From contig NIVC01003400.1 in assembly GCA_002269645.1 (NCBI GenBank), positions 35,702 through 99,701 on the forward strand: 64,000 nucleotides of DNA. The letters run 5' to 3'. Position 1 is the first letter of the stretch; each line of letters opens with the position of its first letter. Source of the stretch: Macrostomum lignano. Taxonomy: Eukaryota. The notes beneath the pieces are model-generated. The model was not told the origin of the DNA. It saw nothing but the letters and a program-made list of their open reading frames with translations, and did not search any database. Positions 6,459-64,000 of this stretch are shown one piece after another. The position numbers and the translations under genes were made by a program.

Positions 6459-6854
6459 ATGCTGAAGATTCGCGCCGCTTTTGTTGTCCTCCTGCTGACT
6501 GCCTGCGTGCTGGCCGGGTTAGTTTTAGTTTGATTTTGTTTATCTAGCATGTATTTTGTGTTGCAGACACCTGACTATGCAGTGCAATAAGTTGCATTTC
6601 TCAATTGCAGCAATTCCGTGTCCGGCAGCGAGGTCTCTAACAATCGGATCTGCCGTCTGGTTGAGGCCATGGCTCGGGTGAGTCTCGGTGCCAGTCGGTT
6701 ACAAAAGATCCCATATTCGCGCATGAAACATGCAGATTTTCTTGAACTTTTCTTAAACTTGCAGGTTGCGGACTGCGACTCCGTGCCAGCTGGCATCGAC
6801 AATGTTTACCTGGGCAAGGCGCTGGAGAAACGCCGCGATCGATTCCGCGGCTGA
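6459..6854 (+). CDS. 71-aa secreted prepropeptide, neuropeptide-like. Exons 6459-6517, 6611-6677, 6765-6854
   Basis: MLKIRAAFVVLLLTACVLAGNSVSGSEVSNNRICRLVEAMARVADCDSVPAGIDNVYLGKALEKRRDRFRG*. Hydrophobic signal peptide, GT-AG introns (gttagt..ttgcag, gtgagt..ttgcag) in compatible phases, dibasic KR site and C-terminal Gly. Confidence 0.75.
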
Positions 6855-8910
6855 TGGAACGTCAACAGCTGATTTGACCACAAGACTTGTTTTGTTTCTT
6901 CAACATTCTGCCCAGGAACTGAACTGTTCTAAGAATCCCTTCTATCTCCCGACTAAGTCTGTGTATTTCGTTTTTTGAACTATCTATAACATCACACTTG
7001 AGTTTCTGGAGACTCGCTAGTGATTAGGAGAATGTTTTTTTGAACGATATCAACTTCGACGATAAAAGCACAGCTTGTGATAAACTGAAACTACAAATAT
7101 AATACACAATTATCGACTGGCTGAGTGAGTCTGTTGCTGACAGTTCTTCAACTGCCCGGTCGAAAGAGAGAGAGAGAGTTGTTAAATTGCAAACCATATA
7201 ATATCTTCCTGTTTGGTCTTGGTTTTTTTACTATGATTGTAAAATCCTTGGTTAGGATCTTGGTCTGATTGGACACTTGTCTTCTAGCTTGTTTGGCGTA
7301 TTCGATGCTTGTGGTCAAGCTCATTGAGCAATCTACAGTATAATAATTATTTTGACAATCTTAAAGCAATTATTTGTCTCCTGTCAAAAGCGCTCTCGCC
7401 TACACAAATAATCTACGAAGTAAGTTTAGTGTCTTTCAATCGCTATCGATGTGTAATCTTCTTAAGCAACACTTTCTTCAGTGCCTTTTAGCCAGTAGCA
7501 TTTCAAATCTTCGTCAGTTAAAACAAAAAATATGCTTGAGGTGTGTGAAAGAGGCTAATTTTAATGTTAACAGGAGCTTGCGATGGCACAGGCATTGAAC
7601 AACAGGGATTGACGTTAACTATTTCTGCTGAGAACTGCGTCTTGTTGGCGTTCTTGGCCGCATTCAATCCAGCGAAGGTTATCGCTTCAATTCTATCTAG
7701 GAGCGGCTGTAATCCCACAACTAAGCCCTGTGCCTTATCATGCAGCTGCGGCGGCAGCTGAACCCAAGCCTTGATCTCACTTCTATTGACTCAAAGCTTA
7801 TCTGCGTAAGCTAAGGAATTAATCGACTTATCATTCGAAAATTACTTTTTTCGAGTGAGAAAAAATGAGTTATTGCCTAGTTCAGTTGCATTTTTTACTA
7901 GACTCATTTCCATTTTTTTGCTGCACCAGTTCTTGTACAAGGATAGTGTTGCAACACCGCTACAGGATCTACAAGTTAGTACTTGAATGTGCCATGTATC
8001 GTTGCGTCTGCACACGGCTCTTCTATGGATCCTGCACTGCGCTTATGGTTGTCATGCTTTACGACCTAGCAAAGATATAAGACAACCGTTTTTACGATTG
8101 TAAACTTAAAAAGAAATGAGTTTCTCTTCAAGTTAATGCAGGTCTATTGGTGTAAGGCACTGAAATGGAACGTCATCCTATCTTCAGTTTTTTAATTCAA
8201 AATTCGTGCGGCTATTTATGGAAGTTTTTCAACCTACCAGACCAGACCTTAAGCTGACGAAGCTTTTGCTTCGGAAATTGCCTTCTTAATTCATTTGCTT
8301 TTTTGCCGAACTGCTAAAACATGAGAATTTTTGGTCAAAGAAACTTGAGCCTTCGGGGAATCGCAACTAATTTCCGTGCTAATTAGCACTGTCGAGTAGG
8401 ATCGGAGCTGTGTTGGAGCGAGTCTTAAAACCGCTTTGAGTTATTGTTGGCGCAGTATGGGGCGAGCAGAAATCCGTTTGATTCCGAGGTGGCTCCTTAA
8501 TTTCCTTCTTTTTTTACTGAGGCAAGTACTGGAATTTTAATCCTGGATTTCCACTGGTCCCTTGGGCATCGGCCTTATTATCCTCACATGATGAGATATG
8601 CATCGAGACGCGTTGGATTTATGCCAATTTCCTCCATCTTTTGCGAAGCAGATTAACCTCAGATTAGATCGATTTGGTCCGAGTCTGAATCCTTAGACCA
8701 TCTACATTCGATTTTGTGCTAGAAAAGTGAATTTATTCTATTTTTGTTGTTTTCCCTGAAAAAACTCAACTTTTATATGCTTTACAATGATGTAGAATAA
8801 ATGCTTATCACAATAGTGACCCTTCTAATTGGCAAAACTTCAAAACTCCACCAAATACAGATCAAATCACTGCAAGCAATTTCAGCCACCTGACCTATTC
8901 GCTCAGTAAA

Positions 8911-31703: not shown

Positions 31704-32022
31704 AGCGGCGTAAGGGCTAGGGTAGGGCTAAGGGTTAGGGCTGGGGCTAGGGCTGGGACTAGGGTAGGGCTAAGGGTCAGGGCTGGGGCTAGGGTAGGGC
31801 TAAGGGTTAGGGCTGGGGCTAGGGTAGGGCTAAGGGTTAGGACTGGGACTAGGGTAGGGCTAAGGGTTAGGGCTGGGGCTAGGGTAGGGCTGGGGTTAGG
31901 GTAGGGTAGGGCTGGGGCTGGTAGGGTTAGGGCTGGGGTTAGGGTAGGGTTAGGGCTGGGGCTAGGGTAGGATTAGGGCTGGGGTTAGGGTAGGGTTAAG
32001 GCCGGGGCTAGGGTGGGGCTAG
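31704..32022 (+). repeat. Degenerate telomere-like hexamer array (GGGTTA/GGGCTA/GGGTAG/GGGGCT)
   Basis: About 50 G3-containing hexamers on the + strand. Confidence 0.9.
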
Positions 32023-32207
32023 GTTTCGGGCTCTTATCTAATCTGTCTATCGTTTGTTTTAACTGGAACCAGCAGAAACAATTGTACCAATCAGTTAAGT
32101 ATTTGGTATCCGAGATGGGGGTATGTTTTTGATCGCCAATTAATGTCCTAGATGACACAAAATGCCCTCGCGAGCTCATGTACATGTACACATGCAAGAT
32201 GCTGCAG

Positions 32208-40029: not shown

Positions 40030-41745
<1,716 letters not shown>

Positions 41746-47069: not shown

Positions 47070-47340
47070 CTCTGGAATCCCTGAGTCTCTGAATCCCTGA
47101 GTCCCTGAATACCTGTGTCCCTGAATCCCTGAGTTCCTGAATCCCTGAGTCCCTGAATTCCTGAATCCCTGAGTCCCTGAATTCCTGAGTCTCTGAGTCC
47201 CTGAATCCATGAGTCTCTGAATCCATGAGTCCCTGATTACCTGAGTCCCCGAGTCCACGAACCCTTGAATCCTGAATCCCTGAGTCCCCGAATCCCTGAG
47301 TCCCTGAATCCATGAGCCCCTAAATCCCTGAGTCCCTGAA
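47070..47340. repeat. Short-period gaatccctgagtccct repeat
   Basis: Direct reading. Confidence 0.85.
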
Positions 47341-48035
47341 TATTTGAAACTATGCAAAATCGGCAGCCCCTTCAAAGCACCAGTCACAGGAGTTTACGTA
47401 CTAGTGCTTTTTTAATAAACTCGGCTCGTCATCTGTGCCAGCCGGTCATGATTTAATTGAGCTGTCAATCGATACACCCCCGAGTCCCGTCACGTCTCGA
47501 ATCTGTCAGGCCTTCGTCTTGACTAAATCTGGTTTTAGACGAGCCTTATTCTATCCAGAACCAGATAGCAGAGCGCGCTATGAGGCTAAAATACTTCAAT
47601 CGATACAGATAGGGAAGATTCAACATTTACTGTTCGCATCGAAGCTGTCAAAGCTTACTGCGCGCGGTAAAATAATATTTGGTCGTTGATTTTATTTGCT
47701 GACAGATTGCAGCTGGGCCGGTATGAAAGCGCCGCTTAGATAACAGACCCGCTGCCTCATCCAGAGAATGCATCAGCCTGAGAGCATAGCGACTAGACGC
47801 TCTCCCAACTGGCAAGCTGGGAGGATGCTGCCCAATAAAATGAAATGGAAATTTGCTCGTTGGCGAGTCCGCTTGAAACTAAAAAGTGGCACTCCAGCCT
47901 AGGGGCCCAGACAGTTCAAAACCGTCGGATCGACTTTGCCTGTCAAACTTGATGAGGTTCACTGGGGGCGTTTCAATTTTTCTTGAGCGTAGTATAGCAT
48001 TGCCAATATGCTGATTTCTACTCCGTCAAAAATCG

Positions 48036-48390
48036 ATGAGGTGGGGCCATGGGGCTAAGGGTGTGAGGTGGGGAGGTGGGGCATCGGGGGTAAGGAATGT
48101 AGAGACAGAGATAGCAGCTGAGGGTGTGAGGTGGGGAGGTGGGCCATCGGGGGTAAGGAATGGAGAGACAGAGACAGCAGCTGAGGGTGTGAGGTGGGGA
48201 GGTGGGCCATCGGGGGTAAGGAATGTAGAGACAAAGATAGCAGCTGAGGGTGTGAGGTGGGGAGGTGGGCCATCGGGGGTAAGGAATGGAGAGACAGAGA
48301 TAGCAGCTGAGGGAGTAAGGTGGGGAGGTGGGGCATCGGGGGTAAGGAATGGAGAGACAGAGATAGCAGCTGAGGGTGTGAGGAATAGAG
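48036..48390. repeat. 63-bp G-rich minisatellite, about 5.5 copies
   Basis: gtgtgaggtggggagg recurs at 48061, 48124, 48187 and onward. Confidence 0.92.
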
Positions 48391-48919
48391 AGACAGAATG
48401 CGATTCAATAATACTTACAAAACAAGCGTCTGTAATACAAAAATTCATCATATATATTTAGAAACCAGGGGATTAAATTTGCGTCCATACTGATAAGAAC
48501 AGACATACAAGCAATGAGGTTTCGAAAATGAACCATTGGAAAGTAGCAGTTGACGGATGGACTCAACTTCAATTAGACCTCAAGGCCTGAACAGGGAGTT
48601 CTCAGAATAGTGAGTCGGAATAGCGATCCCGACTGATGGATGGATTTTCAACAAATCTCATTCGGCCGAGAAGCTTTTTATTTAATTAACCTGATCTCAA
48701 ATGCGAATCTAAGCTGCTTCAGGTGTCCATTTCAGTCAGTTGATTTCTTGCCGTTTTTCTCCTGGGATCAGAGAAGTCCGCAGCTGATGGATGGGGCGGC
48801 TTGGTGGCACTTTTAGTGCAGATTGACCCAAAAGTGCTTGTTGTTACTCCACTGGGTATTAGTTAGCGGCAAAACAGTGACACACTGAAAGTTTTAAGCG
48901 AAATTACCCTCTGAATTCG

Positions 48920-49370
48920 GGGGTGGGTCAGGAACTGAAGATTCGGAGGTGGTGGGTCAGGAACCGGGGATTCTAAGGTGGGTCAGGAACCGGGGATTCT
49001 AAGGTGGGTCACGAACCGGGGATTTTAAGGTGGGTCAGGAACCGGATATTCTGAGGTGGGTCAGGAACCGGATATTCTGAGGTGGGTCAGGAACCGGATA
49101 TTCTGAGGTGGGTCAGGAACCGGATATTCTGAGGTGGGTCAGGAACCAGATATTCTGAGGTGGGTCAGGAACCAGATATTCTGAGGTGAGTCAGGAACCG
49201 GATATTCTGAGGTGGGTCAGGAACCGGATATTCTGAGGTGGGTCAGGAACCGGATATTCTGAGGTGGGTCAGGAACTGAAGGTTTCGGATGTGGGTCACG
49301 AACTGAAGGTTTCGGATGTGGGTCAGGAACCGGGGACTCGGACGTGGGTCAGGAACCGCAGACTCCGAAG
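48920..49370. repeat. 26-bp minisatellite
   Basis: Unit ggtgggtcaggaaccggatattctga. Confidence 0.92.
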
Positions 49371-51224
49371 CAGATCACGATACAGATATTAAAGACTTTA
49401 TGAGCAAGCTTTCTTCAAGCACCCATTTATGAGGTCAGCAGAAAAAGTGTGAAGTTGGCTAGACAAAAAAATGAATTGCCGAGTTATTAACGATCTTGCT
49501 ATCTCGCTATCAAAAGAGGAGCGGATCGAGACTGAACTGAGGTGTAGGGATAGATAAGCACTTGGGGTGAGCATTTTATAGTCCTACTCAAAGCCTTGAT
49601 CCAGCCAAGCTCTTCCTTGCACCAGCTCCGCACCGAATATTATTGAGCTCGAATAGAAACTTCGAGTCGAGAAGAAAAGCTCGAAAAGTTTGCAAGTTTG
49701 ATCCCACTACGAAGAAAATCCCAGCCTGTGCTTGAGTTTACTCACTAGCTAAGCTAACTTCAATCCCCTTTCTCCTCTCCCCTTTTCTTCCCCACTCGAA
49801 TGCACTTATTAAAGTGTCGCGAAATCGCCAAAAATTAGGTTAAAAGTGAGCGCTCTTTCATGGGCTAGATATGGCCAAGTCTGAGCTGCAGACGAAATAA
49901 TGTCCTTACAGTGCATGGCCTTTGCACTAATCCTCTGTTGCAGATTCCATCTCCATCTCGGGCTGGTGATTGCGTTTCGGCAAAAATAGATGCTGCACAG
50001 ATGGATCTGCGGAGAGAACGCGCCTCCCCATGTCAATTTCGCGCCAAAGCTACCCGGCAGTCTCCTCTGTATTATTCAAGCTCGCGACTTCCCCGGTTCG
50101 AAAAAATTAATGGAAATTTTTCTCCCTGGAATTGGCGCCTGAAAAAAATTTCCATATATTGCGAAAAGAGCCTTGTTGCTCCCGGAAGCGGCTGACACCG
50201 ACACCGGCTGGGGACCTCCGCCTCAGGGGGGGGGGGTCAGGAGCCGAGGCGAGGGGACTCCAGGATTCCAATCGATTTTTTAGGCCAGCTTGTTCAACAG
50301 AATCGAAGCGCAATGTCCAGAGGGAGACCAAGACAGACAGCCAGAAAACCAGGAAGGAGATTGCTTGGGCAGAGGCGCGAGATTTCAACTTAAAGAATTT
50401 CCACTCTTGCTTTCAGAAGAAAAGAAACCGCTATTCTTGTGCGTCACAATTTGCCGCTGTGCTGTAAAATATTTAAAGAGAAGTGCCGCCAACAAAAGAG
50501 AAAAGTGTTTTTCTTTGTTACTTTAAAAGCCAAAAAACACCTTTCGCGGCAGTCATTTCTCAAGCCTATAATTTATTGCCCCGATGCTTGGACTCTGTTT
50601 TAGCTAAAAATCAGAAAAATATTTTTTTCTTTTCATGGATATTTACTAATATTCTGTTCACGCCACTGTCAGTAGAATGGAAAGGATGTTGATGGCGAAA
50701 AAAAACGAATCGATACAAAATTTTACCATTTTGAAACCCATTTAGGTCATCATTCAATCAAAAAAAGGTGAGAGGAAAAATGCTTCTTTCCTGTGTCATG
50801 ACTTTCGAGGCTGAAATGTTTATCCCTTTTCCATAAAAATATAAGTCTCAGTTTTATAGAATCCATTCATTAAGTAGTTTGAGAATTGCAGCTCAGAAAC
50901 AGCAGAATCGAGGTGGACAGAGGGCTCAGGAGGGGGAGGTTGCAATAAAATATTAATAATATTTTAGCGGATATAAAAATTGACGGCCTTGGAGACTCGC
51001 GTGCAACTTCATCTTCGCCAGTTTGAGCACTAATTGAGTAGCTCCGGGATCCGAGGTGGAACGGAGTGCTGGGGAGCTGATGGCGGGGGTAGCACCGGAT
51101 GCAGCTGCTCCCTAGAATTTTTGGTGTTGATGGCTTGGTTCAGGGACACCGCGAGCTAGACATCCGGGCAGGAAGTTGAGCTCTGCAGCAAGGAAAGAGT
51201 GATGGTCCGGATGTATTATTCTCA

Positions 51225-51570
51225 AATCGAACTAGCTAAATGGGATCTATGATCTCCAACTCGAACTAGCTAAATGGGATCTATGATCTCCAACTCGAAC
51301 TCAGTGAGACTTATGATCTCCAACTCGAACTCAGTGAGACTTATGATCCCCAAATCGAACTCAGTGAGACTTATGATCCCCAAATCGAACTCAGTGAGAC
51401 TTATGATCCCCAAATCGAACTCAGTGAGACTTATGATCCCCAAATCGAACTCAGTGAGACTTATGATCCCCAAATCGAACTCAGTGAGACTTATGATCCC
51501 CAAATCGAACTCAGTGAGACTTATGATCCCCAAATCGAACTCAGTGAGACTTATGATCCCCAACTAGAAC
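51225..51570. repeat. 30-bp minisatellite
   Basis: Unit ttatgatccccaaatcgaactcagtgagac, about 11 copies. Confidence 0.94.
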
Positions 51571-51593
51571 TTGATGAGACCTATGTCCTTTGA

Positions 51594-51757
51594 GTGCCAG
51601 CATTATATTCCAAATATTCCATTTTACAGCTGGGTTGAACTGAAGCAATGCAGAGTTGAGTGTCTTGCTCAAGGACACAAATTGTTCCAGTGGGATCTGG
51701 AATCGAACCCCCAACCTTCAAGTCATAAGTCCGACACTTTAACCGCAAAGCTACAAC
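51594..51757 (-). mobile_element. tRNA-derived CORE-like SINE, partial copy (head + CORE)
   Basis: Minus strand gttgtagc..ggttcgattcc..tgtgtccttgagcaagacactcaactctgcattgcttcagttcaacccagctgtaaaatgg; homologous to 52142-52615. Confidence 0.8.
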
Positions 51758-52141
51758 TTCAAGCCTCCAATTAAGAGCGCTCCAGACTCTCTCTCCAGTG
51801 CTCCCTGGCCGCTTTTCACTTCGTCCATTTCCGTCTCCAGGGAGGATGCTTCAGAGCAGGCATAAAAATATTATAAAAATCCAACTGATCCGGCCGTTCG
51901 TCATCCAAATCCACCTCCCTACGGTTAGGCATCCCAATGGGATCGTTCTCCCTTCCAGGCCGAGCCTTAGGAACTATAGGGACATTATTGTTGGGGCACT
52001 GGCTGTATGAAGAAATTGAAGAAATTCAATTTTTGCCAGGTGCGGGCCGGCTACTCATCAATCCTCAAGCCATGAAACGCACTAGCAAAGTACAATACTA
52101 CTCGAATTTATGATTATAATGCGAATGTATAATAATAATAA

Positions 52142-52615
52142 GGGGTTGTAGCCTAGTGGTCAGAGCGTCGCACTCACGACTGAAAGGTCAGGGGTTCGAT
52201 TCCCGATCCCACTGGAACAATTTGTATCCTTGAGCAAGACACTTAACTCTGCATTGCTTCAGTTCACCCAGCTGTAAAATGGGTGCCAGCATTAGCTGGG
52301 GTAATTGAGGGTGTGTGGCGACCCCCCAGTCCTTGGACTGAACAGCCGTACGCAGCCTTCAGATGCGCCGCGCAATAGCTGCGGCTGAGCTGTCGGTTGC
52401 ACATCTGGCCATTCGGACAGGTGTAATAAATTGCAACAGAGTTTGGTCACTCTGGTGCGCCCCACAACCAGCACTGAGGCGATTCTGCTCATTCTGCTGG
52501 CTCCTGAGCACATGCAAGCGCGCCAATGCTGTATGCAGACACGCACTCATGCACACGCTCACACAGGGTGTACAGCGATCCCGACTTTCTAATCGTGGTG
52601 TCGCGAGAGTCAGAC
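52142..52615 (+). mobile_element. tRNA-derived CORE-like SINE, full-length-looking copy
   Basis: A box tagcctagtgg, B box ggttcgattcc, CORE-like tgtatccttgagcaagacacttaactc...cagttcacccagctgtaaaatggg, ~300-bp body shared with the 60.8-61.25 kb copy. Confidence 0.85.
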
Positions 52616-52662
52616 ATGTTCAAGGCTGCTACTTGACCATATACTCAAGCGAAACAGCCAGC

Positions 52663-53037
<375 letters not shown>

Positions 53038-53757
53038 GCAGAGTGCATCAGTCAGACGAAAGTAATAGTTAAAAAGTACATCAGGGTTTTTTAGTAAGCG
53101 CGGGCAGACCCGGAGTCTCCTAAAGAGAAATAGGAGACGAAATGGCCGGTGGCCGAGCAGTTTTATGGCCCCCCACTGAGAAAGAAAATGTCCGGCCGAG
53201 TCTGATCGATAAAGGGAAGAGTTGGGATGGAATTACTAGCTGGCAAGATATTCCTAAGCTGCATTATAAGCTGGGAAATGAATCACTTTGGCTGGCCGCC
53301 ATAGGCTCGGATATGGAGTACTAAAACTGGCAATCTGGAGTGGAAATTTGCTGACTTTTCATCCGGTTTTTATGCGAAAAAACCTTCGGCGCGGACAACA
53401 ACGAGAAAGTTAGAAAGTCAAATGCAGTCTTGGCGCGCTTGTTATGTGCTTGTATTTAAAACCAAAGATTTCTGTTTGGCTTACGGTTTAACGGGGTTTT
53501 TACCAGAGACGAGACTCATATAAAGAAAAAATGCGACCAGAAAAGATGGCTGAGAGATACAGGACCAGCTTCTGTTCCAGATTCTGTTGGAAAAGGATTG
53601 AGACTGGATCTCCAGATACCGGAACTAGAACTCCATGGTTCCAAGTGAGCAGTTAAAAGTCTCAATTTCCTCACTGGGGAATTGTCTCCGGACGGGAGCA
53701 GCAGTGAGAACCGTTAAGTCACAAAGTAGAACTTCAACTCATTCGAACATCTGAAGA

Positions 53758-55179
53758 ATGGCGGATGAACAAGGTAAGAAGGTATTCAGAACCTGTGCGT
53801 GGATGAAATCATTGATTTATTTTAAACATTGCCAAACAACAACCAATCAAACATAACTTATTTATGACTTTTTTACTGGATGAATGAAGGTGATGCTGCG
53901 ATCTGGGACTCTAATTACAAATTACAAAATTACCAACTAATTCAGTGTTACATATTGAATTATTAACACATTGCTTACTCTGGGTTCCTCTTAACGTCTT
54001 TTTATTACCCTATCAGAAAATACATAATTTCTGATTTAAAAGAAATTTACATGTTTGCATTGCTCTGGTTGTTAATTTTTTTAAGCTGAAGCTGCTGAAC
54101 CAGAAGTGACTGAGCTTGAAGCGACTGAGCTTGAAGCGACTGAGCCTGAAGCGACTAAGGCTGAAGCGACTGAGCCTGAAGCTGCTGAGCCTGAAGCTGC
54201 CGAACCTGAAGCGACTGAACCTGAGGCAGCTGAGCCTGAATCGACTGAGCCTGAATCGACTGAGCCTGAAGCGACTGAGCCTGAAGCGACTGAGCCTGAA
54301 GCGACTGAGCCTGAAGCGACTGAGCCTGAAGCGACTGAGCCTGAGGCAGCTGAGCCTGAATCGACTGAGCCTGAATCGACTGAGCCTGAAGCGACTGAGC
54401 CTGAAGCGACTGAGCCTGAAGCGACTGAGCCTGAAGCGACTGAGCCTGAAGCGACTGAGCCTGAAGCGACTGAGCTTGAAGCGACTGAGCCTGAAGCGAC
54501 TAAGGCTGAAGCGACTGAGCCTGAAGCTGCTGAGCCTGAAGCTGCCGAACCTGAATCGACTGAGCCTGAAGCGACTGAGCCTGAAGCGACTGAGCCTGAA
54601 GCGACTGAGCCTGAAGCGACTGAGCCTGAGGCAGCTGAGCCTGAATCGACTGAGCCTGAATCGACTGAGCCTGAAGCGACTGAGCCTGAAGCGACTGAGC
54701 CTGAAGCGACTGAGCCTGAAGCGACTGAGCCTGAAGCGACTGAGCCTGAAGCGACTGAGCCTGAAGCGACTGAGCCTGAAGCGACTGAGCCTGAAGCGAC
54801 TGAGCCTGAAGCGACTGAGCCTGAAGCGACTGAGCCTGAAGCGACTGAGCCTGAAGAGACTGAGCCTGAAGAGACTGAGCCTGAAGCGACTGAGCCTGAA
54901 GAGACTGAGCCTGAAGCGACTGAGCCTGAAGCGACTGAGCCTGAAGAGACTGAGCCTGAAGCGACTGAGCCTGAAGCTGCTGAGCCTGAAGCGACTGAGC
55001 CTGAAGCGACTGAGCCTGAAGAGACTGAGCCTGAAGCGACTGAGCCTGAAGAGACTGAACCTGAAGCGATTGAGCCTGAAGCGACTGAGCCTGAAGCTGC
55101 TGAGCCTGAAGCGACTGAGCCTGAAGCGACTGAGCCTGAAGCGACCGAGGCCGAGGCTGCTGAACCTGAAGCAGCTTAA
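53758..55179 (+). CDS. 369-aa acidic low-complexity (EATEP)n protein. Exons 53758-53773, 54086-55179
   Basis: ATG GCG GAT GAA CAA G|gtaaga ... tttttttaag|CT GAA GCT gives MADEQAEAAEPEVTELEATE... In-frame TGA lies 6 nt upstream of the ATG. Repeat variants are enriched for synonymous third-position changes in this frame. aataaa signals near 55585-55606. Confidence 0.68.
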
Positions 55180-55874
55180 ACAGCAGTGTCTCACATCCGT
55201 GAATTTTGATTCTGACTATCTTATTAATCCTAGAGCGATGATGTTTCTGCTTCTGCTTATTGTTGAAATCTGCTTGACGGTCTCGCGTCATTCGCGCTTC
55301 AATTTCAACTCTATCGCCTTATTAATCCGCAGTCTCCCTGCTAAAAAAGACAGCCTAATTCTCTATCTGTTTAACCTGAATTCCCCGCTTCGCTTGCCAC
55401 AAAGTTTTCTTGCACCACTTTGACAGCTTGCCAGACTGATTATTGCTTCGCTTTTTCACAATTTGGTTTTTTGATCTTTGGTGTTTTGGCCCTGTCGCAG
55501 TAGCTTACTGTGAGTAGTCTCGTTGGAATATTTGCAAATATTGTTGATACAAAGACAAGAAACTTATCTTGCTTTCTATAGTAAAATAAATTAAATTCAT
55601 AATAAAATTTTACCGCAATGCTTTCTGCTTAGCAATGAAAAGCTGTCTCGCGCCTTCTTCGTGAATTTCTTCGAGTTGTAGAAATTTCTGCTGGACAGTA
55701 AAAGGAAAAAAGTTATTTGCATTTTTATTGCGCCATCCTTTATATACTATATATCATATATCATACTGTTTACGCTCGTAACAACTATGCAGAAAATTTC
55801 GAAACTAATGGGGGGGCAGGAAGCGTCGAGGATATATTGACTTAGCTGCAGGGGGCATCGTCCGGCGCAGTCGA

Positions 55875-56246
55875 GAATGTCAGGAAGCATAAAAATGTCA
55901 GGAAGCATTAGCAATGTCAGGACAAAGAAACATGTCAGAAAGCATTAAATGTCAGGAAGCTTAAAAAATGTCAGGAAGCGTCAAAAATGTCAGAAAGCGT
56001 TGGGAATGTCAGGAAGCGTTTGGAATGTCAGGAAGCGTTGGGAATGTCAGGAAGCGTTTGGAATGTCAGGAAGCGTTTGGAATGTCAGGAAGCGTTTGGA
56101 ATGTCAGGAAGCGTCGAGAATGTCAGGAAGCGTCGAGAATGTCAGGAAGCGTCGAGAATGTCAGGAAGCGTCGAGAATGTCAGGAAGCGTCGAGAATGTC
56201 AGGAAGCGTCGAGAATGTCAGGAAGCGTCGAGAATGTCAGGAAGCG
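55875..56246. repeat. 19-20-bp minisatellite
   Basis: Unit gaatgtcaggaagcgtcga. Confidence 0.94.
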
Positions 56247-56297
56247 GCTCATAATGGATTAAATTAATTAGCTATTATATCATCCCAGAACAGCCGT

Positions 56298-56370
56298 CAG
56301 TGGCAGATCCAGGAGTTTTCCCGGGGGGGTCAGCCGACCCCCTTGACCCCTCCCCCTGGATCGGCCCATG
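56298..56370. mobile_element. Tiny hAT-like MITE remnant (73 bp)
   Basis: cagtggcagatccagg ... cctggatcggcccatg (13/16 inverted match). Flanks acagccgt/ctcgccgt match only partly. Confidence 0.4.
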
Positions 56371-57151
56371 CTCGCCGTTTCAAAAAGCCGTAGGAACACG
56401 CGGCTGCTGGGTGAGTAAGGCGGCGCACAGACGGCTTGAATTTGCTTAGTAAAAACCCGATCTGCGGCGCGTGACAAAGCGAGTCAGGGCAGAAATTCCC
56501 AGTGGAATTTTGGCAGTTTTTCTATTGTCAACTTTGGCCTTTACACTCGTATTCTGCTGCTCAAACTGATTGAATAGCCGCAAACAAGGAGTTCTAAGTC
56601 TAATTATTTGGCAACGTATTCAAAGCTGTTCGCGCACAAGCACGCAGGTCTCATTCTACTCGGTTTCTACTGAATAGTATTGTCTGTCGTTTATTTCGTC
56701 CAAAATCTTTGCTCAATTAGCTTTGGACATTGCTGAAAAATCCGAGCCTGAAAGAGTATTAAATTGAGTACTCAGTCGAGTACAGTGCAGTTGTATGAGT
56801 CATACCTAGCAGCAGAGCTATAGTTGCGGGTATACTGTAGATATTGTAGGTCAGCTGAAGACACACACACACACACACACACACCTGCCTGCCTATGTGC
56901 CTGAAAGTCGCATTCGCGTCTCTTCCAGCGCTTATCGATGCCCGAACGAGCGACTGATAAGAAAAGGGGCGATTGGAACAGCTAGCATGGAGCAGCTTGG
57001 GGCTGGGCACTACTCAGGGGGGGGGGTTCTTATCTCACTAAGGCCCAACCTCAACAACAAATCGAGTTAGGAAATCAAAGAAAAGCCAGCAGAGCGAAGC
57101 GTCAAGAGGCAAAAATTCGAGTCAACCGCTCTAAGCCAGACTGCTGCAGTT

Positions 57152-58243
57152 ATGTCCTTCTTCCGGGCGCCCAGCGAGTCCAAAGGCTTCGAACTAGATG
57201 ACGGAGCCGGGAGTCTGGACGCGCAGCCGCGCAGGACGGCGCCAAGCGTGACCGGCGCCAGCTCAGCGGCCGGTGGCAGCGTCGCCGCCCGCTCGCACAT
57301 CACCAAGGCCAGCCGCTACACTCAGCAGACATTCACGAATACCGCTAGCGAGTTGCCCGACCGTCGGCCGGCTCTGGTGCGCGAGGCCGAAGCGTTCCTG
57401 ATGTACCTGTACAACCCTGAGTCGGGAACCATTCTCGACCGCACACTGCCGCAATTCTTCGCTTTGATGCTATCCTACTTCATATTTTACTCCCTCATCA
57501 TTATTCTGCTGATCATCAGCTACGTGATCTTCTCATTCTTAGTTATCAATGAGGACACGCCGCACCTCACTGGAGAGCAGAACGTCCTGCGCCTCTCGCC
57601 AGCTCTGGCCATGCGACCGGTGCCTGACTTCATGGGCACGCTGATTCGCTTCAGGCAGACCCGGCCGGAGAGTTACCTGATCTACACCACCCACCTGCAG
57701 GCCTATCTGGATCAGTACGAGCTGTTTTACAACACCGAGCGCGATGTGAACATCGTGGATTGCAATATTGAGACGCAGGAGCGCGGCAGCCCCGACCCGA
57801 ACGATCCGTGCCGTTTCGAGCTCAGCTGGCTGGACCCGTGCAGCAAGCAGGGCTTCTTCGGCTATCCGCGCGGCTCGCCCTGCGTCCTGCTGAAGCTGAA
57901 CCGAGTGTTCGGCTGGGTGCCCGACATCATCAGCAACAGCACCTCGTACAATATGCTTGTGCGCTGCAACGGGAGAACGGACACGGACAGGGAGAACATG
58001 GGCCAAATTAAGTACTACCCTTCGGAGACGATCAAAGGTGTGGAGTACGGCATCATGAGCCCTCTGTTTTATCCCTACCTGACGCAGGTTGGTTACAGAA
58101 GTCCACTCGTGGCGGCTCGATTCGTTAGTCCGAAGCGAAACGTGGTCATCATGGTGGAGTGCCGGGTGTACAATGTTCGCAACGTGCGAACAACAAACGA
58201 TTTGCGATCTGATCGATTGGCGTTCGAGCTGATGATTGACTAA
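57152..58243 (+). CDS. ATP1B: Na+/K+-ATPase beta subunit (nervana-like), 363 aa, intronless
   Basis: YLYNPESGTILDRT, single TM, SPALAMRP, CRF...C..GYPRGSPCVLLKLNRVFGWVP, YYP..FYPY..Q.GYRSPLVA, IMVECR. Confidence 0.93.
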   Translation: MSFFRAPSESKGFELDDGAGSLDAQPRRTAPSVTGASSAAGGSVAARSHITKASRYTQQTFTNTASELPDRRPALVREAEAFLMYLYNPESGTILDRTLPQFFALMLSYFIFYSLIIILLIISYVIFSFLVINEDTPHLTGEQNVLRLSPALAMRPVPDFMGTLIRFRQTRPESYLIYTTHLQAYLDQYELFYNTERDVNIVDCNIETQERGSPDPNDPCRFELSWLDPCSKQGFFGYPRGSPCVLLKLNRVFGWVPDIISNSTSYNMLVRCNGRTDTDRENMGQIKYYPSETIKGVEYGIMSPLFYPYLTQVGYRSPLVAARFVSPKRNVVIMVECRVYNVRNVRTTNDLRSDRLAFELMID

Positions 58244-58454
58244 ACTTGACTAAGCATAAATTTGCATTAACCGCAACTAGCCTTATGAATCACTGTAGAC
58301 TGCTCATTAGCTTGGCTTATTGACTTCTAATTATATACATATATGAGACGTGTATACTACTTTCGAATAAACGTCAATGCAGCAAATGCATTGTGCGAAA
58401 AGGTGCCTGTGTGTAGTAATTTTATATAATTATTAAAAAATAACAAATTACTGC

Positions 58455-58762
58455 CAAGCTGCAGCGCCCGTCCATCATCCTGCGCCGGCGGCGACTTCAA
58501 CTGGCGGGCCACGTGATCCGGGCCGAGGGCTACCTGCCCCCAGCCTTTTCAGGACGTCCTGCTGCTCACCTTGCAGGGTCCGTTCAGACGGGGTCAGGCC
58601 CAGACCCGTCGATATGTGGACTCCCACGCGACGCCGGGGCGCCCGACACTGCGAACGGGGCGGACTTCATCCGCTCTCAGGCTCTGCGGCGCGCCATCTG
58701 ACGCGCCCTGCTCTGTGACTTTGCTTGCGGGGCTGCGTATTTTGTTGTTGTTGTTGTTGTTA
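58455..58762 (+). mobile_element. RTE-clade LINE 3' fragment with (TTG)n tail
   Basis: LRRRRLQLAGHVIRAE, then frameshifted LLLTLQGPFRRGQAQTRRYVD, ending in tttgttgttgttgttgttgtt. Confidence 0.75.
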
Positions 58763-59515
58763 AATTACGAACAACAAGGTCAAAACTCGTTTAGCTGAAA
58801 AAAAAATATGCACAGTCAAGCTACAAATTGTATCTCCACTGAACGATTGGATGGACTTTAAAGTACATTTTCAGCCCCTTTACTTCGAGCTTATTTAGCA
58901 TCGAAACTTTGTAAAGGTCATTTTCCTACTATAAATCCATACGAAGTTGTAGAGGCCTGAAGCAGTGGCAGTATATGTGGGCCATGGCCTTCTACTCGCC
59001 TCTTAAGTCATCACTTAATTATTGAGGGGTTAACCAGAGCCAACACTATCTTATTTTTTGAATTATGATGTGACAGCTAGCAACCAGGGGTCTGAGCCCC
59101 CTCCCTCTGTTATGATGGCTTTACTGGGTGAGTCTGCAGTCCTAAAGTCCAAGCAGGCAGCTTAACATTCAAGTTGCTGCTGTTATACTCGAAAGAAGCG
59201 GTTGAGCAGCTCAATAGCTGAGAGACAGTTTATGGAACAAAAGAAAAATAGGTGAGGGCCTGACGGGCCGCCCCAGGAGACCCACCCAGCGCCTGATGGA
59301 GAGCTGGGGTAGACACCGAGTAAACAAATTCTGCAGGGTGGGTCAGTCAGACCAGCGCCTATTTAAGTCGCAGACTGAATGGGCCTTGGCCCTTCTTTGC
59401 AAGCATCGCTGTAGAGCGAAGCGTATCTGTTAATTTAGCAAACTTCTGTTGAAAAATACACTGCTGAGATTAGCATACTCCCCCTTAGCAACTATCCACC
59501 TGAGCCCATAGAGCA

Positions 59516-62500
59516 ATGAGGCCAACAGTCGCCCTCATTGTTGCCTGCCTGTGCGTGGCGTCGGTGAGCCTCATTGACGCTCGCCGTTCGTTCCAACAGA
59601 GGTGGAATTTCCGCTACAGCTGCTCGAATCTGGTGCTGGGCGACGCGCAGTTTTACACCTGCCCGTCGGGTAAGATTTAGGGTTTTTTATTCGACTCTGT
59701 TTGAAAATTAATCAGCTAAGAAAGTCCAATTGACAACGTTAAACTGTCTCTCATGTTTACTAGGCTACCAGCTGTTCGCCAGAGGTCCGATGTGCTACCG
59801 ATTCTACTCACAGCGAATGCGCTGGGATCAGGCCAACAGCACCTGCGCCAGGTAATCTTTTAATTGCTATCCACTTGTTTAATTTGCCGTTCGATTAATT
59901 CCCTGATAGGAGATTTCGCTTAGTCTAGCGAAGACTTGTTAAACGTATCTAATTGTTCAAATCATAGGTAAAAGGCGAAAGACTTTGAAAATAGGCCTCG
60001 CCAGCTAATTAGTTTTCGTCAGTAGCAAAACTCAAGATAAATTGCTGCCAATTCATACCTACCCCCCCCCCCCCGACTTTCCAGCGTTGGCGGCCGCCTA
60101 GCCGAAGTGGAGGGTCGCTGCCTGACCCGATGGTTGGTGCGCCAGTTCCGCGGTGCCGCCTTCTCGCGCCGCTTCCGGTTCTGGTTTGGCTTGCGCTGCC
60201 ACAGAAGCTTCGATCGCGACTGCCGATCGTCCAGGGGCCGCCGGAGGGCGCAGTACCGCGGCTACTGGAACTACGGCATCATGGACTCGGGCACTGGTAT
60301 GACTTTATAATGTACTTTTGTGTGGAAGTAAGCATCTGTCATTTTTAGCACTTTGAATTCATTCGAAATGGAACTTTGTGCAGGCGAGCAATGCGCCGAG
60401 CTCGACGCCGATCAGGACAACGACGACGCCTGGAGTTTGAGCTTCTGCGACCGGAAGCGACGGTTCGTTTGCGAGGCGGAGCCGTGCACCCGCGGCTGGT
60501 ACCGCTGCAACGGCAGCGGCCGGCGCATCACCCGCTGCCAGCTGTGCGACGGCCGGAACGACTGCCCAGCCGGTGACGACGAGGATCAACCGCAGTGCCG
60601 TAAGAAGTCGTTTAATATTGAACATTAGAAACCTTTTTGACTTTAAATTTTAAAACGCGTCTGACTTTAGTGGCCGCTACATTGCATTAATTTGAGGCCT
60701 GTGCACGAAATATTTGCCGAGGGGAAGTCGCCCAATTTGCAGCAATTAGGGCCAGCCCCCAAAGGCACAGAGTGTACATGCCTGGATGATTAGAAAGTCA
60801 AAGGGCTGCCCTGTACACCTGTGTGAGCGTGTGTATGAGTGCGCGCCTGCATACAACGTTGGCTCGCTTGTGTTGTGCTCAGGAGCCAGCGGAATGGACA
60901 GCATTGCCTCAGCGCTGCTGGTTGTGGGACGATGTCGCCGGGTTGCGAGCCAGGGTGCTCACAACCTTCCTATTAACAAAAAAAATAATTCCACCGGCCC
61001 AAATGGGCAGATATGTAGCCGACAGCTCAGCCGCAGCTATTGCGTGGCGCGTCTGAAGGCTGCGTACGGCTGTTCAGTGCATGGACTGGGGAGTCGCCAC
61101 ACACCCTCAATTAGCCCAGCTAATGGTGGTACCCATTTTACAGCTGGGAAGCAATGCAGAGTTGAAGACAAAAATAGTTTCACCGGGATCGTGAATCGAA
61201 CCCCCGACCTTCAAGCCATGGGTCCGACGCTCTAATCACTAGGCTACAACCAGTAGGTGACAATATTCTTGCCATTTGTCATTATTATTTTAATAACTTT
61301 TTCTTTACTAGCTCGCCGAGTGTCCTGCGGTGGCAATTTCGATGCGAAGGTAAATACCACGGGTGAGCTGCTGTCGCCAGGCTATCCGAACAAGTACCAG
61401 AACGATGTCAAGTGCGTCTGGACAATCAAGATGGATGCTACTGACTCTCTTAAGCTGAACGTAAGTTTTCTGCTTCATTAACTGGCTAAATAAAAACACT
61501 AAAATGATTGAATGAACAATCACAAAATTTATCGCTTCATTGCAGTTCAACTTCTTCGAAACGGAGCGATTGTTCGACAGGCTGCATGTGTTCCTTGGCG
61601 ACCCGTCCGCTCTGCTTCAAGTCCGGTTGCCGTTCAGCGGCTCACTGGTCAGCGGCTACTCGTGGCAGATGCCGCAGGGCGCCGACATGATCTCTCTGGT
61701 CTTCACCTCTGACTTCAGCATGGTCTACAAAGGCTTCAACATCACCTACGAAGTCTGTAAGTTATTATTATTCAAAATTCTTTCTCTGAGATTCTATTCT
61801 ATCTCATGCGGATGGCTATGCACACATGATTTATTGTTAGTAGTTTCTCTGGAAGCCAGTCTCTTCACTAAAACGAATCTGCGTCAATGAAAAAAGTGTC
61901 TCTACAGTGCTAAGAAAAAATAGAATAGTCACGTCATGCAAACAGACTCACGCAGGCTATTTGTCTGTATGAGAACAGCTAGTTTTGCTGCCCCCCAGCT
62001 GGCTTGGGCATCATTAATTAAGAGCACAGAGGCATTCCGTCTATTTGAAAGGTGCATCAAGACGGAGAGATGGTTTGACGTCGGGTGGGCAGGCCAAGCG
62101 CATCTTGAGCGGGACAGGCATGATTGTTTGCATTAAAACTGGGTGCGCCCGAGACGGCTCCCTTTACTTATTTTATTTTCAGCCTGCAAAAATGCCAAAA
62201 GCGCTTCAAGAGGACCTCGTGTTTCACTCAGCTCTTTTATCTATTGTGCAATCACCTTGCCTTGTTTCTAAATTTAGGAACAAAACGAAAACTGGGTGGG
62301 TCTTGGCTCTAGGCCACTTCATTAAGTGGCTGTAAAGGGCCTCGGCTTTTGTCTACTCTAAGTAGGTGGGTGGAGAAACAATGAAAAAAATGTCTCTGCA
62401 CAAAAACTATTTTGCTGCTGATGCGTCAACAAGATGGCTGCAGGGTAGAGTGGGTGGCACTATGGAAACCAACACAACAAACATTGTTTGACCGGCTCAA

Positions 62501-64000
62501 GTTTAGCTTCTATCTGCAAGGAGAAGATGAAAATTTTGTTGAAACTATCAATGATGACTCATCTTTGCCTTAACCATGCAACCCTTGTAACAAAATTTGA
62601 CTGGGACCACAAACCAACCACAACACAGCCAGTGCCTCGTGCTCGTTCAGCCAGAGCATCGGCAGCCCCGGCTACTCTCTGGCGATCACCCCGGCCAACC
62701 TGACTGCCGGCAAGACTTGCTCCTGGCAGCTGTCCAGCTCGGTGTCTGCGGCCGCCAACCTGAGCTTCAGTCTGGATGCCTTCAGCATTCCGGCCGGCTG
62801 TAGCATCAAATTTTATTTCGGCACAGCCAGCAGCGATGCCTCCCTGCTGGCCGAGCTGTCCGGCACTCGGGCCTACGCCAGCTCCATCGTGTCCAGCACT
62901 TCGGCAGTGCTAGTTGAATCCTACTGCAGCTTCTCCGCGGTGCTCACTGGCCTCAGCGGCAGCATCCTCTCTGGCCGAGTTCGTCCCGGATGCAGCATTG
63001 AGATTTACGCCAGCAGCGGCGTCATCGAGTCACCCGGCTACGATGTTGCTTACCCCAACTATGCTAACTGTCAGTATATTGTCATGGCCTCGGTGCCTCA
63101 GTGGAAGCTCAACATGGAATTCTTCGAACTGGAGGTTGGCTACGACTCCGTTAACATCAGCACTAATCAGTCTTCAACTGCCTACAGCCTGCTGAGCACG
63201 CCCGAGGCGGTGCAGCAGAGCCTGACAGCTCTCGGCAGCTTCAATTCCAGCACCCAGCTTACCATCACGTTCCAATCCGACTTCAGCGTCCAGAGAAGAG
63301 GCTTCCGATTCTCATTTTCGAAGCCGTGCGTCGGTTCGCTGGGCAATCTCGCCTACGGCATGATGATGAACTACACCTGCCCCTTTGGCTCAGTGTTGGG
63401 CAACGCCAGTCTGAGAACGGAGTTTGTTGAGGTCACCTGCACGATGGGTGGCGTCTTTTCACCCAGCGCCGTGCTCTGCGTTCGTGAGTAGCTTGAGGGT
63501 GGGGTTTGATAGAGTCCTTTGTCAGTCTGACTAGCATACTAAAGAACACGTCTCAATCACTCTACAGCGAAGACCTGCGGCAGGCCATCATTGCCGGCCA
63601 ACAGCATCGCCAGGGTTGGCGGCCTGTTCCTCGGTAACCGCACCGAGTACGAATGCATGCCTGGCTATGAGCTGGTAGGCCCCAGCTATAGCGAGTGCAC
63701 CTTGGACGGTTGGACTGCGACGCCGACATGCAGATGTAAGTATTGTTTGACTGTTCTAATAGCCATGGGATACTCTTTCAGTTTTTTATTATAGTATGCT
63801 AACTACGAGTTAAGTGCAAAGTTTCGAAGTAAGGCCTGAAAATCCCTTTACGTCCATCATAGTATTTCAGAATTCCGGCACCAATATTTTATCCGCGTGC
63901 ATGTCTCGTATTTCAGCCATCCAGTGCAGCATTCCGTCGGATCGCGATCCGAACCTGGAGATTCTGCTTGGCGGCACCATTTTCAAATTTGGCGGCCTGG
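59516..64000 (+). CDS. Large secreted/membrane protein SP-CTL-LDLa-CUB-CUB-CUB-Sushi..., Uninflatable-like, 5' part. Exons 59516-59669, 59764-59851, 60085-60296, 60384-60599, 61312-61460, 61546-61756, 62629-63483, 63568-63735, 63917->64000
   Basis: Signal MRPTVALIVACLCVASVSLIDA; CTL CPSGY..CYRF..WDQANSTC..GGRLA..WFGL..C..FVCE; LDLa CTRGWYRC..CDGRNDCPAGDDE; CUB SPGYPNKY..CVWTI..FTSDFS..KGF; Sushi YECMPGYELVG..C..W. All junctions are GT-AG and phase-compatible. Confidence 0.85.
60786..61251 (-). mobile_element. tRNA-derived CORE-like SINE copy in intron 4 of the Uif-like gene
   Basis: Reverse complement aligns by eye to 52142-52615 along its length (head, cagctgtaaaatggg, gagggtgtgtggcgac, body), with a deletion in the CORE part. 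Confidence 0.85.

What the first reader, a model, noticed from the sequence alone, without database searches (positions are those of the whole stretch)
53758..55179. A 'minisatellite' that is probably a real gene: two-exon, extremely acidic (EATEP)n protein
Seen: a 16-nt first coding exon (MADEQ, purine at -3, G at +4, upstream in-frame stop, donor gtaaga) splices in phase 1 onto a T-rich acceptor at 54085 that opens exactly the E-A-T-E-P frame. Unit variants favour synonymous changes in that frame (GAA/GAG, GCG/GCA/GCT/GCC, ACT/ACC, CCT/CCA), and most replacements stay among small or acidic residues (T>A, A>S, A>E). The product has about two Glu per five residues, no Cys or aromatics and no signal peptide. 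Inference: an undescribed intracellular disordered polyanion (Ca2+/cation buffer, cytoskeletal spacer or chaperone-like) that repeat-masking pipelines would discard.
Basis: partly seen in the sequence, partly recalled or inferred. Interest (0 to 1): 0.75.

Follow-up and report, generated by a model that had tools for sequence, protein, structure and literature searches.

The report
Spliced flatworm minisatellite with acidic ORF
A 15-base minisatellite in the flatworm Macrostomum lignano is already annotated in GenBank as the second exon of a two-exon gene that could encode a very acidic (EATEP)n polypeptide, but nothing shows that the protein is made or selected for, and the sister copy of the gene is annotated in a different reading frame.

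Summary
The sequence features are real. There are 72.5 copies of CTGAAGCGACTGAGC at 54086-55172. A 16-nt ATG exon (53758-53773) with a GTAAGA donor joins a T-rich AAG acceptor, giving a 369-aa ORF that is 41% Glu.

The window is Macrostomum lignano contig NIVC01003400.1. Its transcript-derived GenBank annotation already holds a gene at exactly 53758..55179 with a 369-residue product, so the model is neither undescribed nor discarded by pipelines.

Two further genomic copies keep the exon, the intron and the array (59 and 56 units). In one of them GenBank starts 7 nt later, at a second ATG, and reads the array as basic (LKRLS)n. The frame call therefore looks like a longest-ORF choice.

The EATEP frame is open from the first ATG to the same TAA in all three copies. 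The LKRLS frame is closed by a TGA in the window copy.

Evidence for protein-level selection is marginal:
- Synonymous variant types are 7 of 15 (nominal P=0.037); pooled with the paralogue, 7 of 18 (P=0.125).
- The antisense SVASG frame scores the same counts.
- EATEP codons are non-preferred.
- There are no homologues and no Pfam match.

Open frames through arrays are common here (14 of 26 arrays). My best reading is a young, lineage-specific, transcribed and spliced minisatellite proto-gene. Interest is modest.

The parts
53752..53754 (+). In-frame TGA three bases upstream of ATG1. It is also the stop of a 39-codon upstream ORF that starts at 53635.
   Evidence: translation of the upstream 150 nt; list of upstream ATGs
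53758..53773 (+). Coding part of exon 1: ATG1 in a strong context (A at -3, G at +4), encoding MADEQ plus the first base of an Ala codon. Identical in all three genomic copies.
   Evidence: Start of the GenBank gene model (L001 6607 = window 53758).
53765..53767 (+). Second ATG, 7 nt downstream and in another frame (ATGAACAAG|intron). It feeds the (LKRLS)n frame. The GenBank model of the paralogue L002 starts here.
53774..54085 (+). Intron of 312 nt (GTAAGA ... TTTTTTTAAG). It is 301 nt in the paralogues and 11% diverged from them, but the donor and acceptor are kept.
   Evidence: Intron length equals gene span minus CDS in both annotated models.
54086..55179 (+). Exon 2 coding part, which is the 15-nt minisatellite: 72 full units of consensus CTGAAGCGACTGAGC plus a mutated last unit. 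It reads (EATEP)n when entered from ATG1.
54107..54109 (+). TGA created by the C>T variant in unit 1. In the window copy it closes the (LKRLS)n frame after 10 codons when read from ATG2.
   Evidence: The LKRLS ORF in the ORF listing starts only at 54116.
55177..55179 (+). TAA stop of the EATEP frame (G>T in the last unit). The same stop and the same C-terminal units (EATEA EAAEP EAA*) occur in all three copies.
55180..55606 (+). Putative 3' UTR. It ends at the first two plus-strand AATAAA motifs after the stop (55585-55590, 55601-55606). This is inferred, not shown.
   Evidence: Alignment to the paralogue is 94.7% identical, with an indel just after the stop.
57152..58243 (+). Downstream neighbour on the same strand: a single-exon Na/K-ATPase beta-subunit gene. 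It served as the anchor to identify the organism and fetch the paralogous loci. It is not part of the feature.

Best explanation
This is a young, Macrostomum-specific proto-gene built on a minisatellite.

Proposed mechanism:
- RNA polymerase II transcribes the locus.
- A 312-nt intron is removed, joining a short 5' exon to an exon that is essentially nothing but a 15-nt tandem array.
- The mRNA probably ends at its own AATAAA signals about 420 nt past the array.
- Scanning ribosomes would meet ATG1 first, in a strong context. By default they would make MADEQ-(EATEP)n, a proline-punctuated, Glu-rich, unstructured polyanion of 289-369 residues. Its length changes with array copy number.

I see no detectable selection on the peptide sequence. 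If the product exists, it is at most composition-dependent (a soluble charged spacer or shield) and may be neutral.

Shown here: the array, the ORF, three genomic copies, and public transcript-derived gene models that use the same intron. Inferred: transcript ends, translation, and any function.
For: - The window is M. lignano NIVC01003400.1, and a called gene sits at exactly 53758..55179 with 369 residues.
- The annotation is RNA-seq/transcriptome derived, with TransDecoder ORFs (PMC5730564).
- The paralogous locus L002 has a model with the same donor and acceptor. The removed length of 301 nt equals its GTAAG..TTAAG interval, as 312 nt does in the window.
- Exon 1, both ATGs and the splice sites are identical in three copies, although the intron is 11% diverged.
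- The EATEP frame from ATG1 is open to the same TAA in all three copies, at 369, 304 and 289 aa. The competing LKRLS frame is closed in the window.
- Of the arrays in the 17 kb covered by the annotation look-up, only this one lies in a gene model.
- EATEP is the frame with the strongest synonymous excess, nominal P=0.037.
- Youth and orphan status: no homologue and no MADEQ N-terminus among 5.8 billion proteins, no Pfam match, and non-preferred codons.
- Known precedents exist for repeat-built ORFs: PMC6410882 and PMC12888051.
Against: - No RNA-seq read, ribosome footprint or peptide was seen directly. Transcript support is second-hand, through the annotation.
- TransDecoder chose another frame in the paralogue, so the public CDS is a longest-ORF call.
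- The synonymous excess disappears when the paralogue is pooled (7/18, P=0.125). All three paralogue-specific variant types are non-synonymous.
- The antisense frame has equal counts.
- EATEP codons have an RSCU geometric mean of 0.77, against 2.01 for LKRLS.
- Apart from five codons, the ORF contains no unique sequence.
- Five upstream ATGs lie within 340 nt. Depending on where transcription starts, they could suppress initiation at ATG1.
- Array copy number drifts between copies just as it does in neighbouring non-coding arrays.
Confidence: 0.5

Rival explanations
1. A transcribed minisatellite that is functionally non-coding: either a lncRNA or transcriptional noise that happens to be spliced. 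The array is open in several frames by chance, and the annotated proteins are artefacts of longest-ORF calling.
For: - Five of six consensus frames lack stops, and 14 of 26 arrays in the window are open in at least one frame.
- The two paralogues are annotated in different frames.
- The selection signal is marginal, codon usage is poor, and there are no homologues.
- Copy number is as unstable as in neighbouring arrays, for example 72.5 against 56.5 units.
- Flanking divergence is elevated (11% in the intron against 0.2% in the neighbouring CDS), as expected next to an unstable array.
Against: - The first AUG of the annotated exon is in a strong context and opens a 1.1-kb ORF, so a cytoplasmic capped mRNA would be translated by default.
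- The EATEP frame and its stop are kept in all copies.
- EATEP shows the best synonymous excess of the five open frames.
Confidence: 0.33
2. The RNA is the upstream part of a polycistronic or outron-type precursor of the Na/K-ATPase beta gene 2 kb downstream on the same strand. The annotation pipeline cut it out as a separate 'gene'. Its only role would be as a promoter-proximal leader.
For: - The same-strand neighbour starts at 57152.
- In M. lignano about 7% of assembled transcripts are multi-gene precursors, 38.8% of genes are SL trans-spliced, and the TBONE pipeline cuts transcriptional units at trans-splice and poly(A) sites (PMC5730564).
- The arrangement is syntenic in all three copies.
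Against: - Two plus-strand AATAAA motifs lie 406-427 nt after the stop, before the next array.
- The annotation lists the locus as a separate gene with its own CDS.
- No trans-splice or poly(A) data could be examined here.
Confidence: 0.1
3. The biologically relevant product is the basic (LKRLS)n polypeptide read from the second ATG, as annotated in the paralogue. The window copy would then be a pseudogene.
For: - The GenBank model in L002 uses this frame, giving 338 aa.
- Its codons (CTG, AAG, CGA, CTG, AGC) are the preferred ones, with an RSCU geometric mean of 2.01.
Against: - The frame is closed by a TGA after 10 codons in the window.
- ATG2 is downstream of ATG1 and in a weaker context.
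- The post-array tails of this frame differ completely between copies because of indels.
- There is no synonymous excess: 5/15 and 6/18, P>0.8.
Confidence: 0.03
4. The gene model is an annotation or mapping artefact, for example repeat-containing reads mis-assembled by StringTie, and no such spliced RNA exists.
For: - Short reads map ambiguously in 1.1 kb of 15-mers.
- The third copy, L003, carries no model.
- The protein is absent from the protein collection.
Against: - Two separate models use a canonical GTAAG/AAG intron whose length fits each copy exactly, 312 and 301 nt.
- The intron and exon 1 are unique sequence, so junction reads are mappable.
- L003 is a poorly polished near-duplicate of L002, which may explain the missing model there.
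Confidence: 0.05

Closest known systems
Gadid (codfish) antifreeze glycoprotein genes, (Thr-Ala-Ala)n, born de novo from a 9-nt non-coding element (Zhuang et al. 2019, PMC6410882)
   Same: Almost the whole CDS is a tandem array of a short unit whose length is a multiple of 3. A small upstream exon, spliced in frame, supplies the N-terminus. The residues are Ala/Thr/Pro-type and the product lacks a fold. The gene is lineage-restricted.
   Different: AFGP has a signal peptide, a proven function, and orthologous non-coding precursors mapped across species. Here there is no signal peptide, no demonstrated translation, and no outgroup data.
orf143 in human lncRNA VPS9D1-AS1: a translated de novo ORF elongated by a polymorphic tandem-repeat array (Chou et al. 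2026, PMC12888051)
   Same: An ORF in an otherwise unremarkable transcript owes its length to a tandem-repeat array, and that array expands and contracts between copies or alleles.
   Different: Translation of orf143 is supported by ribosome profiling, and its birth was reconstructed phylogenetically. Neither is available here. In this locus the array makes up about 98% of the ORF.
Bacterial (E-x-T-E-P)n linker regions in secreted and cell-surface proteins (hits P0001-P0017 and others)
   Same: The same pentapeptide periodicity and composition, such as EATEPEVTEPE runs of 100-250 residues. This shows that such a sequence is compatible with a stable, extended, soluble spacer.
   Different: Those are linkers between folded domains of signal-peptide-bearing bacterial proteins. 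The matches are compositional convergence, not homology: there is no shared unique sequence and no shared N-terminus.
Engineered XTEN/PAS-type polypeptides, and natural acidic disordered proteins such as prothymosin alpha and trypanosome EP/GPEET procyclins (own knowledge, not tested here)
   Same: An alphabet restricted to A, E, P, S and T, with no hydrophobic core, high negative charge and a large hydrodynamic volume. This is what an (EATEP)n chain would 'work like'.
   Different: There is no sequence relationship. Procyclins are secreted and GPI-anchored. Prothymosin is conserved and non-repetitive. XTEN is synthetic.
Ordinary non-coding minisatellites (VNTRs) of the M. lignano genome
   Same: The array is a head-to-tail run of a 15-nt unit. 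It shows internal block duplications, copy-number differences between genomic copies, and diverged flanks. It is one of about 30 arrays in this 64-kb window. Simple and tandem repeats make up 15% of the genome (PMC5730564).
   Different: It sits in a spliced, annotated transcript directly behind an AUG-bearing exon. None of the other arrays in the annotated 17 kb does.

Membership tests
Minisatellite / VNTR | Head-to-tail array of a 10-100 nt unit with high unit identity | tested here: met
   72.5 copies of 15 nt with 91% matches and no indels. All units are in register.
Minisatellite / VNTR | Copy-number variation between alleles or paralogous copies, with internal higher-order duplications | tested here: met
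   72.5, 59 and 56.5 units in the three copies. Unit blocks 3-7 = 26-30 and 9-11 = 17-19 = 36-38.
Protein-coding gene (generic criteria) | Spliced, processed transcript | tested here: inconclusive
   Supported indirectly. Transcript-derived GenBank models in two copies imply the same GT-AG intron of 312 and 301 nt. No reads could be inspected.
Protein-coding gene (generic criteria) | ORF preserved in all copies from a plausible start codon | tested here: met
   The path from ATG1 through EATEP to the same TAA gives 369, 304 and 289 aa. This test is weak, because only 2 of 45 possible single changes to the unit create a stop in this frame.
Protein-coding gene (generic criteria) | Excess of synonymous over non-synonymous variation, specific to one frame | tested here: inconclusive
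   7/15 synonymous, P=0.037 nominal, with five frames tested. Pooled, 7/18, P=0.125. The antisense SVASG frame scores the same counts.
Protein-coding gene (generic criteria) | Codon usage like that of the host's genes | tested here: not met
   GAA, GCG, ACT and CCT are minority codons, with an RSCU geometric mean of 0.77. The LKRLS frame scores 2.01. The reference set was 2359 codons from nine ORFs in the window, eight of them with a Pfam domain match.
Protein-coding gene (generic criteria) | Homologues in other taxa, or a known domain | tested here: not met
   Only compositional bacterial linker hits were found, with no MADEQ N-terminus. No Pfam family matched. No paper contains the peptide.
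Protein-coding gene (generic criteria) | Evidence of translation (ribosome footprints or peptides) | not testable with these tools
   No Ribo-seq or proteomic data are reachable.
De novo / proto-gene | Lineage-restricted ORF with a non-genic orthologous sequence in outgroups | not testable with these tools
   Lineage restriction is suggested by the absence of homologues. No other Macrostomum genome could be searched.
Secreted repetitive acidic proteins (procyclin- or mucin-like) | N-terminal signal peptide | tested here: not met
   The N-terminus MADEQAEAAEPEV has no hydrophobic stretch. This was judged by inspection, not with a predictor.

The most novel reading that the evidence does not exclude
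A dual-frame minisatellite mRNA. Two AUGs 7 nt apart in exon 1 feed two different open frames of the same array. Leaky scanning would then yield both a polyanion, (EATEP)n, and a polycation, (LKRLS)n, from one transcript. Both frames are open in the L002 and L003 copies. Such oppositely charged polymers could associate with each other, for example as a complex coacervate. Their stoichiometry would be set by start-codon choice and their length by array copy number.
Probability: 0.03. Interest if true: 0.75.

Novelty: new member of a known kind. Interest (0 to 1): 0.3.

Why it matters
If the (EATEP)n polypeptide is really made, this would be a clean animal example of a gene whose coding sequence is a still-unstable minisatellite. 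Its protein length would vary with repeat copy number. It occurs in an organism where transgenesis and RNAi allow a direct test. It would also add a natural XTEN-like polyanion to the catalogue of highly charged disordered proteins.

The more immediate value is cautionary. In the repeat-rich M. lignano genome, the public annotation assigns two near-identical paralogues to two unrelated 'proteins', one acidic and one basic, simply because different frames are the longest. Repeat-derived 'hypothetical proteins' in this annotation should therefore not be taken as evidence of coding.

Tried and rejected
The unspliced 357-aa ORF is not on record. The exact-sequence cluster look-ups of the window product and of three paralogue products all returned 'not in the collection'. 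No accession or Mlig identifier could therefore be obtained, so no expression tables could be mined.
2. The full-length and the N-terminal homology searches returned only bacterial low-complexity linkers. I rejected these as homologues.
3. A literature search for the peptide string found nothing.
4. Rfam at gathering thresholds over the whole window found nothing.
5. I tried to recover the annotation for the rest of the window through the IF-2B, cystatin and NDUFC2 ORFs, with two alternative starts. All failed, as none is an exact gene product. The control 'how many arrays lie in gene models' therefore covers only 47152-64000.
6. I considered the (LKRLS)n frame as the true product and rejected it for the window copy because of the TGA at 54107.
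7. I considered antisense coding. The LSRFR and SVASG frames are open, but there is no antisense gene model and no ATG.
8. I did not run structure prediction or the representative-library search. A Pro-every-fifth-residue polyanion would give only a disordered model, and the search would return unannotated low-complexity hits.

Full report
**What is in the sequence**

Tandem Repeats Finder reports 72.5 copies of a 15-nt unit (consensus CTGAAGCGACTGAGC) at 54086-55172, with 91% matches and no indels. Cutting the array into units shows that every unit is in register. In one plus-strand frame each unit reads E-A-T-E-P or a close variant, ending in EAA-TAA at 55177-55179.

ATGGCGGATGAACAAG lies at 53758-53773, with A at -3 and G at +4 and an in-frame TGA three bases upstream. 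It is followed by GTAAGA. The sequence gttaatttttttaag|CT lies at 54085/54086. Joining the two exons gives a 1110-nt CDS and a 369-aa product (E150, A76, P66, T60, S7, L3, K2). It has no Cys, aromatic residues, His or Arg, and a net charge of about -149. In the unspliced DNA the EATEP frame is closed by TAA at 54082-54084. The ORF is therefore exactly the array plus five codons.

**Where the window comes from, and what is already annotated**

The neighbouring 363-aa ORF (57152-58243; Na/K-ATPase beta, Pfam PF00287) is an exact product on NCBI contig NIVC01003400.1 of assembly GCA_002269645.1. Its cluster mates are named Macrostomum lignano BOX15_Mlig027205g1 and g3.

In the same look-up, the gene called upstream lies at L001 6607..8028 with a 369-residue product and no Pfam hit. 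L001 is identical to window 47152-64000, so this gene is window 53758..55179.

The GenBank annotation of this assembly was produced from StringTie/TACO and de novo transcriptome assemblies. Transcripts were cut at trans-splice and poly(A) sites, and TransDecoder called the ORFs (Wudarski et al. 2017, PMC5730564). The gene model is therefore public and transcript-derived. It is neither undescribed nor discarded by the pipeline.

**Paralogous copies**

The two cluster mates of the neighbouring gene led to two further loci. L002 is on NIVC01001481.1 and L003 is on NIVC01004073.1. Both contain the identical exon-1 sequence, a 301-nt intron, and arrays of 59 and 56 units. L003 is a poorly polished near-duplicate of L002: the flanks are almost identical, but the neighbouring CDS carries many 1-nt indels. 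There are therefore effectively two diverged versions.

In L002 GenBank also has a gene model, but it spans 6793..8110 and gives 338 residues. It starts at a second ATG, 7 nt downstream of the first (ATGAACAAG|GTAAGG), and reads the array in the other open plus-strand frame as M-N-K-(LKRLS)n.

In both models, gene span minus CDS equals the GTAAG...TTAAG interval of that copy: 312 nt in the window and 301 nt in L002. This is good indirect evidence that the intron is real.

The same comparison shows that the reading frame in the annotation is simply the longest ORF. EATEP (369 aa) wins in the window because LKRLS is cut by a TGA at 54107-54109. LKRLS (338 aa) beats EATEP (304 aa) in L002.

**Is the EATEP frame under coding constraint?**

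Points in favour:
- It starts from the first AUG, in a strong context.
- It is open to the same TAA in all three copies, at 369, 304 and 289 aa.
- The LKRLS frame is closed in the window, and its post-array tail differs between copies because of indels.

Points against, or uninformative:
- The consensus unit is stop-free in five of six frames, and only 2 of 45 single changes create a stop in the EATEP frame. Openness therefore has little power.
- Fourteen of the 26 large arrays in the window are open end to end in at least one frame.
- The array has 15 distinct variant types. Seven are synonymous in the EATEP frame against 4.3 expected, nominal P=0.037 with five frames tested. The antisense SVASG frame also has 7.
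- Adding the paralogue gives 7 of 18, P=0.125. The three paralogue-specific types (A>G, A>R, P>T) are all non-synonymous.
- Variant occurrences are inflated by internal block duplication.
- EATEP uses minority codons of this genome (RSCU geometric mean 0.77), whereas LKRLS uses the preferred ones (2.01).
- Copy number differs between copies just as in neighbouring non-coding arrays. The 26-mer has 16.9 against 35.9 copies, (ACAG)n has 97 against 191, and the 30-mer has 10.1 against 2.1.
- Divergence between the window and L002 peaks around the array: 11% in the intron and 5.3% in the 3' flank, against 2.3% upstream and 0.2% in the neighbouring CDS. This is what one expects next to an unstable array.

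**Was the splice model convincing from sequence alone?**

It was not. In the 1 kb upstream there are 21 ATG...GT exons that would enter the EATEP frame. With a GTRAG donor there are two, and 39% of shuffled sequences give at least one. The support for the intron comes from the annotation, not from the motif match.

**Homology and literature**

The full-length search and a 67-aa N-terminal search of 5.8 billion proteins returned only bacterial (E-x-T-E-P)n linker regions. None had a MADEQ start. There is no Pfam family, no Rfam family in the window, and no paper containing the peptide.

Conceptually close cases are the gadid AFGP genes, built de novo from a 9-nt unit with a spliced upstream exon (PMC6410882), and human orf143, a translated de novo ORF elongated by a polymorphic tandem repeat (PMC12888051).

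**Interpretation**

The array is real, and the two-exon transcript is probably real. I put this at about 0.9, resting on two concordant transcript-derived models.

Whether the acidic polypeptide is made is open. I put it at about 0.5, because a first AUG in good context is translated by default unless the true 5' UTR includes the upstream ATGs at 53422-53635. That it is a selected, functional protein is less likely, at about 0.25.

My best reading is a young, lineage-specific proto-gene riding on a minisatellite. If its product exists, it would behave as an XTEN-like unstructured polyanion. This last comparison is from my own knowledge and was not tested here.

The rivals are:
- a purely non-coding spliced transcript;
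- a cut-out piece of a polycistronic precursor of the Na/K-ATPase beta gene;
- the basic (LKRLS)n frame as the true product;
- an annotation artefact.

Noticed in passing
L002 6793-8110 against window 53758-55179: GenBank annotates two near-identical paralogues of one locus as unrelated proteins, (LKRLS)n of 338 aa and (EATEP)n of 369 aa. Different frames of the same minisatellite happen to be the longest ORF in each copy. This is a caution for repeat-derived 'hypothetical proteins' in this annotation.
   Followed up: yes
window 1-64000: The density of tandem arrays is extraordinary: 65 TRF rows, about 30 distinct arrays with periods from 4 to 63 nt. About a third have periods divisible by 3, which is the chance expectation. 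Several sit between exons of real genes, for example arrays at 35869-38546 between the two K2P-channel ORFs, and 20710-21209 between the SH3 and guanylate-kinase ORFs.
   Followed up: partly
window 38421-38546 and 31713-32023: Interstitial telomere-type repeats. (ACCCTA)21 lies immediately next to a K2P channel exon. A degenerate GGGTTA/GGGCTA-like array of about 310 nt is also present.
   Followed up: no
window 40033-41745: An almost perfect (AGAT)428 microsatellite of 1.7 kb at 99% purity. (ATAG)110, (AGAC)51 and (ACAG)97 runs occur elsewhere in the window.
   Followed up: no
window 53774-54085 and 55180-55260, against L002: There is a local divergence hotspot around the array between otherwise nearly identical duplicated blocks. 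The intron is 11% diverged and the 3' flank 5.3%, with a roughly 25-nt indel block. The Na/K-ATPase beta CDS 2 kb away is only 0.2% diverged. A gapped block of about 80 alignment columns also lies near 53410 (the window lacks sequence that L002 has).
   Followed up: partly
window 884-1468 (-): A 194-aa ORF with a GIY-YIG nuclease domain (Pfam E=2.6e-6). It may be a Penelope-like retroelement remnant and sits next to a 20/40-nt array.
   Followed up: partly
L003 10001-11092: The third copy of the Na/K-ATPase beta gene is annotated as only 82 aa. Compared with L002 it carries about a dozen single-base indels near the contig end. This looks like unpolished long-read sequence rather than a true pseudogene.
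   Followed up: partly
window 53635-53754 (+): A 39-codon upstream ORF in frame with ATG1 ends 3 nt before it. A conserved TATAAA lies at 53519-53524. Depending on the transcription start site, the upstream ORF could gate translation of the main ORF.
   Followed up: no
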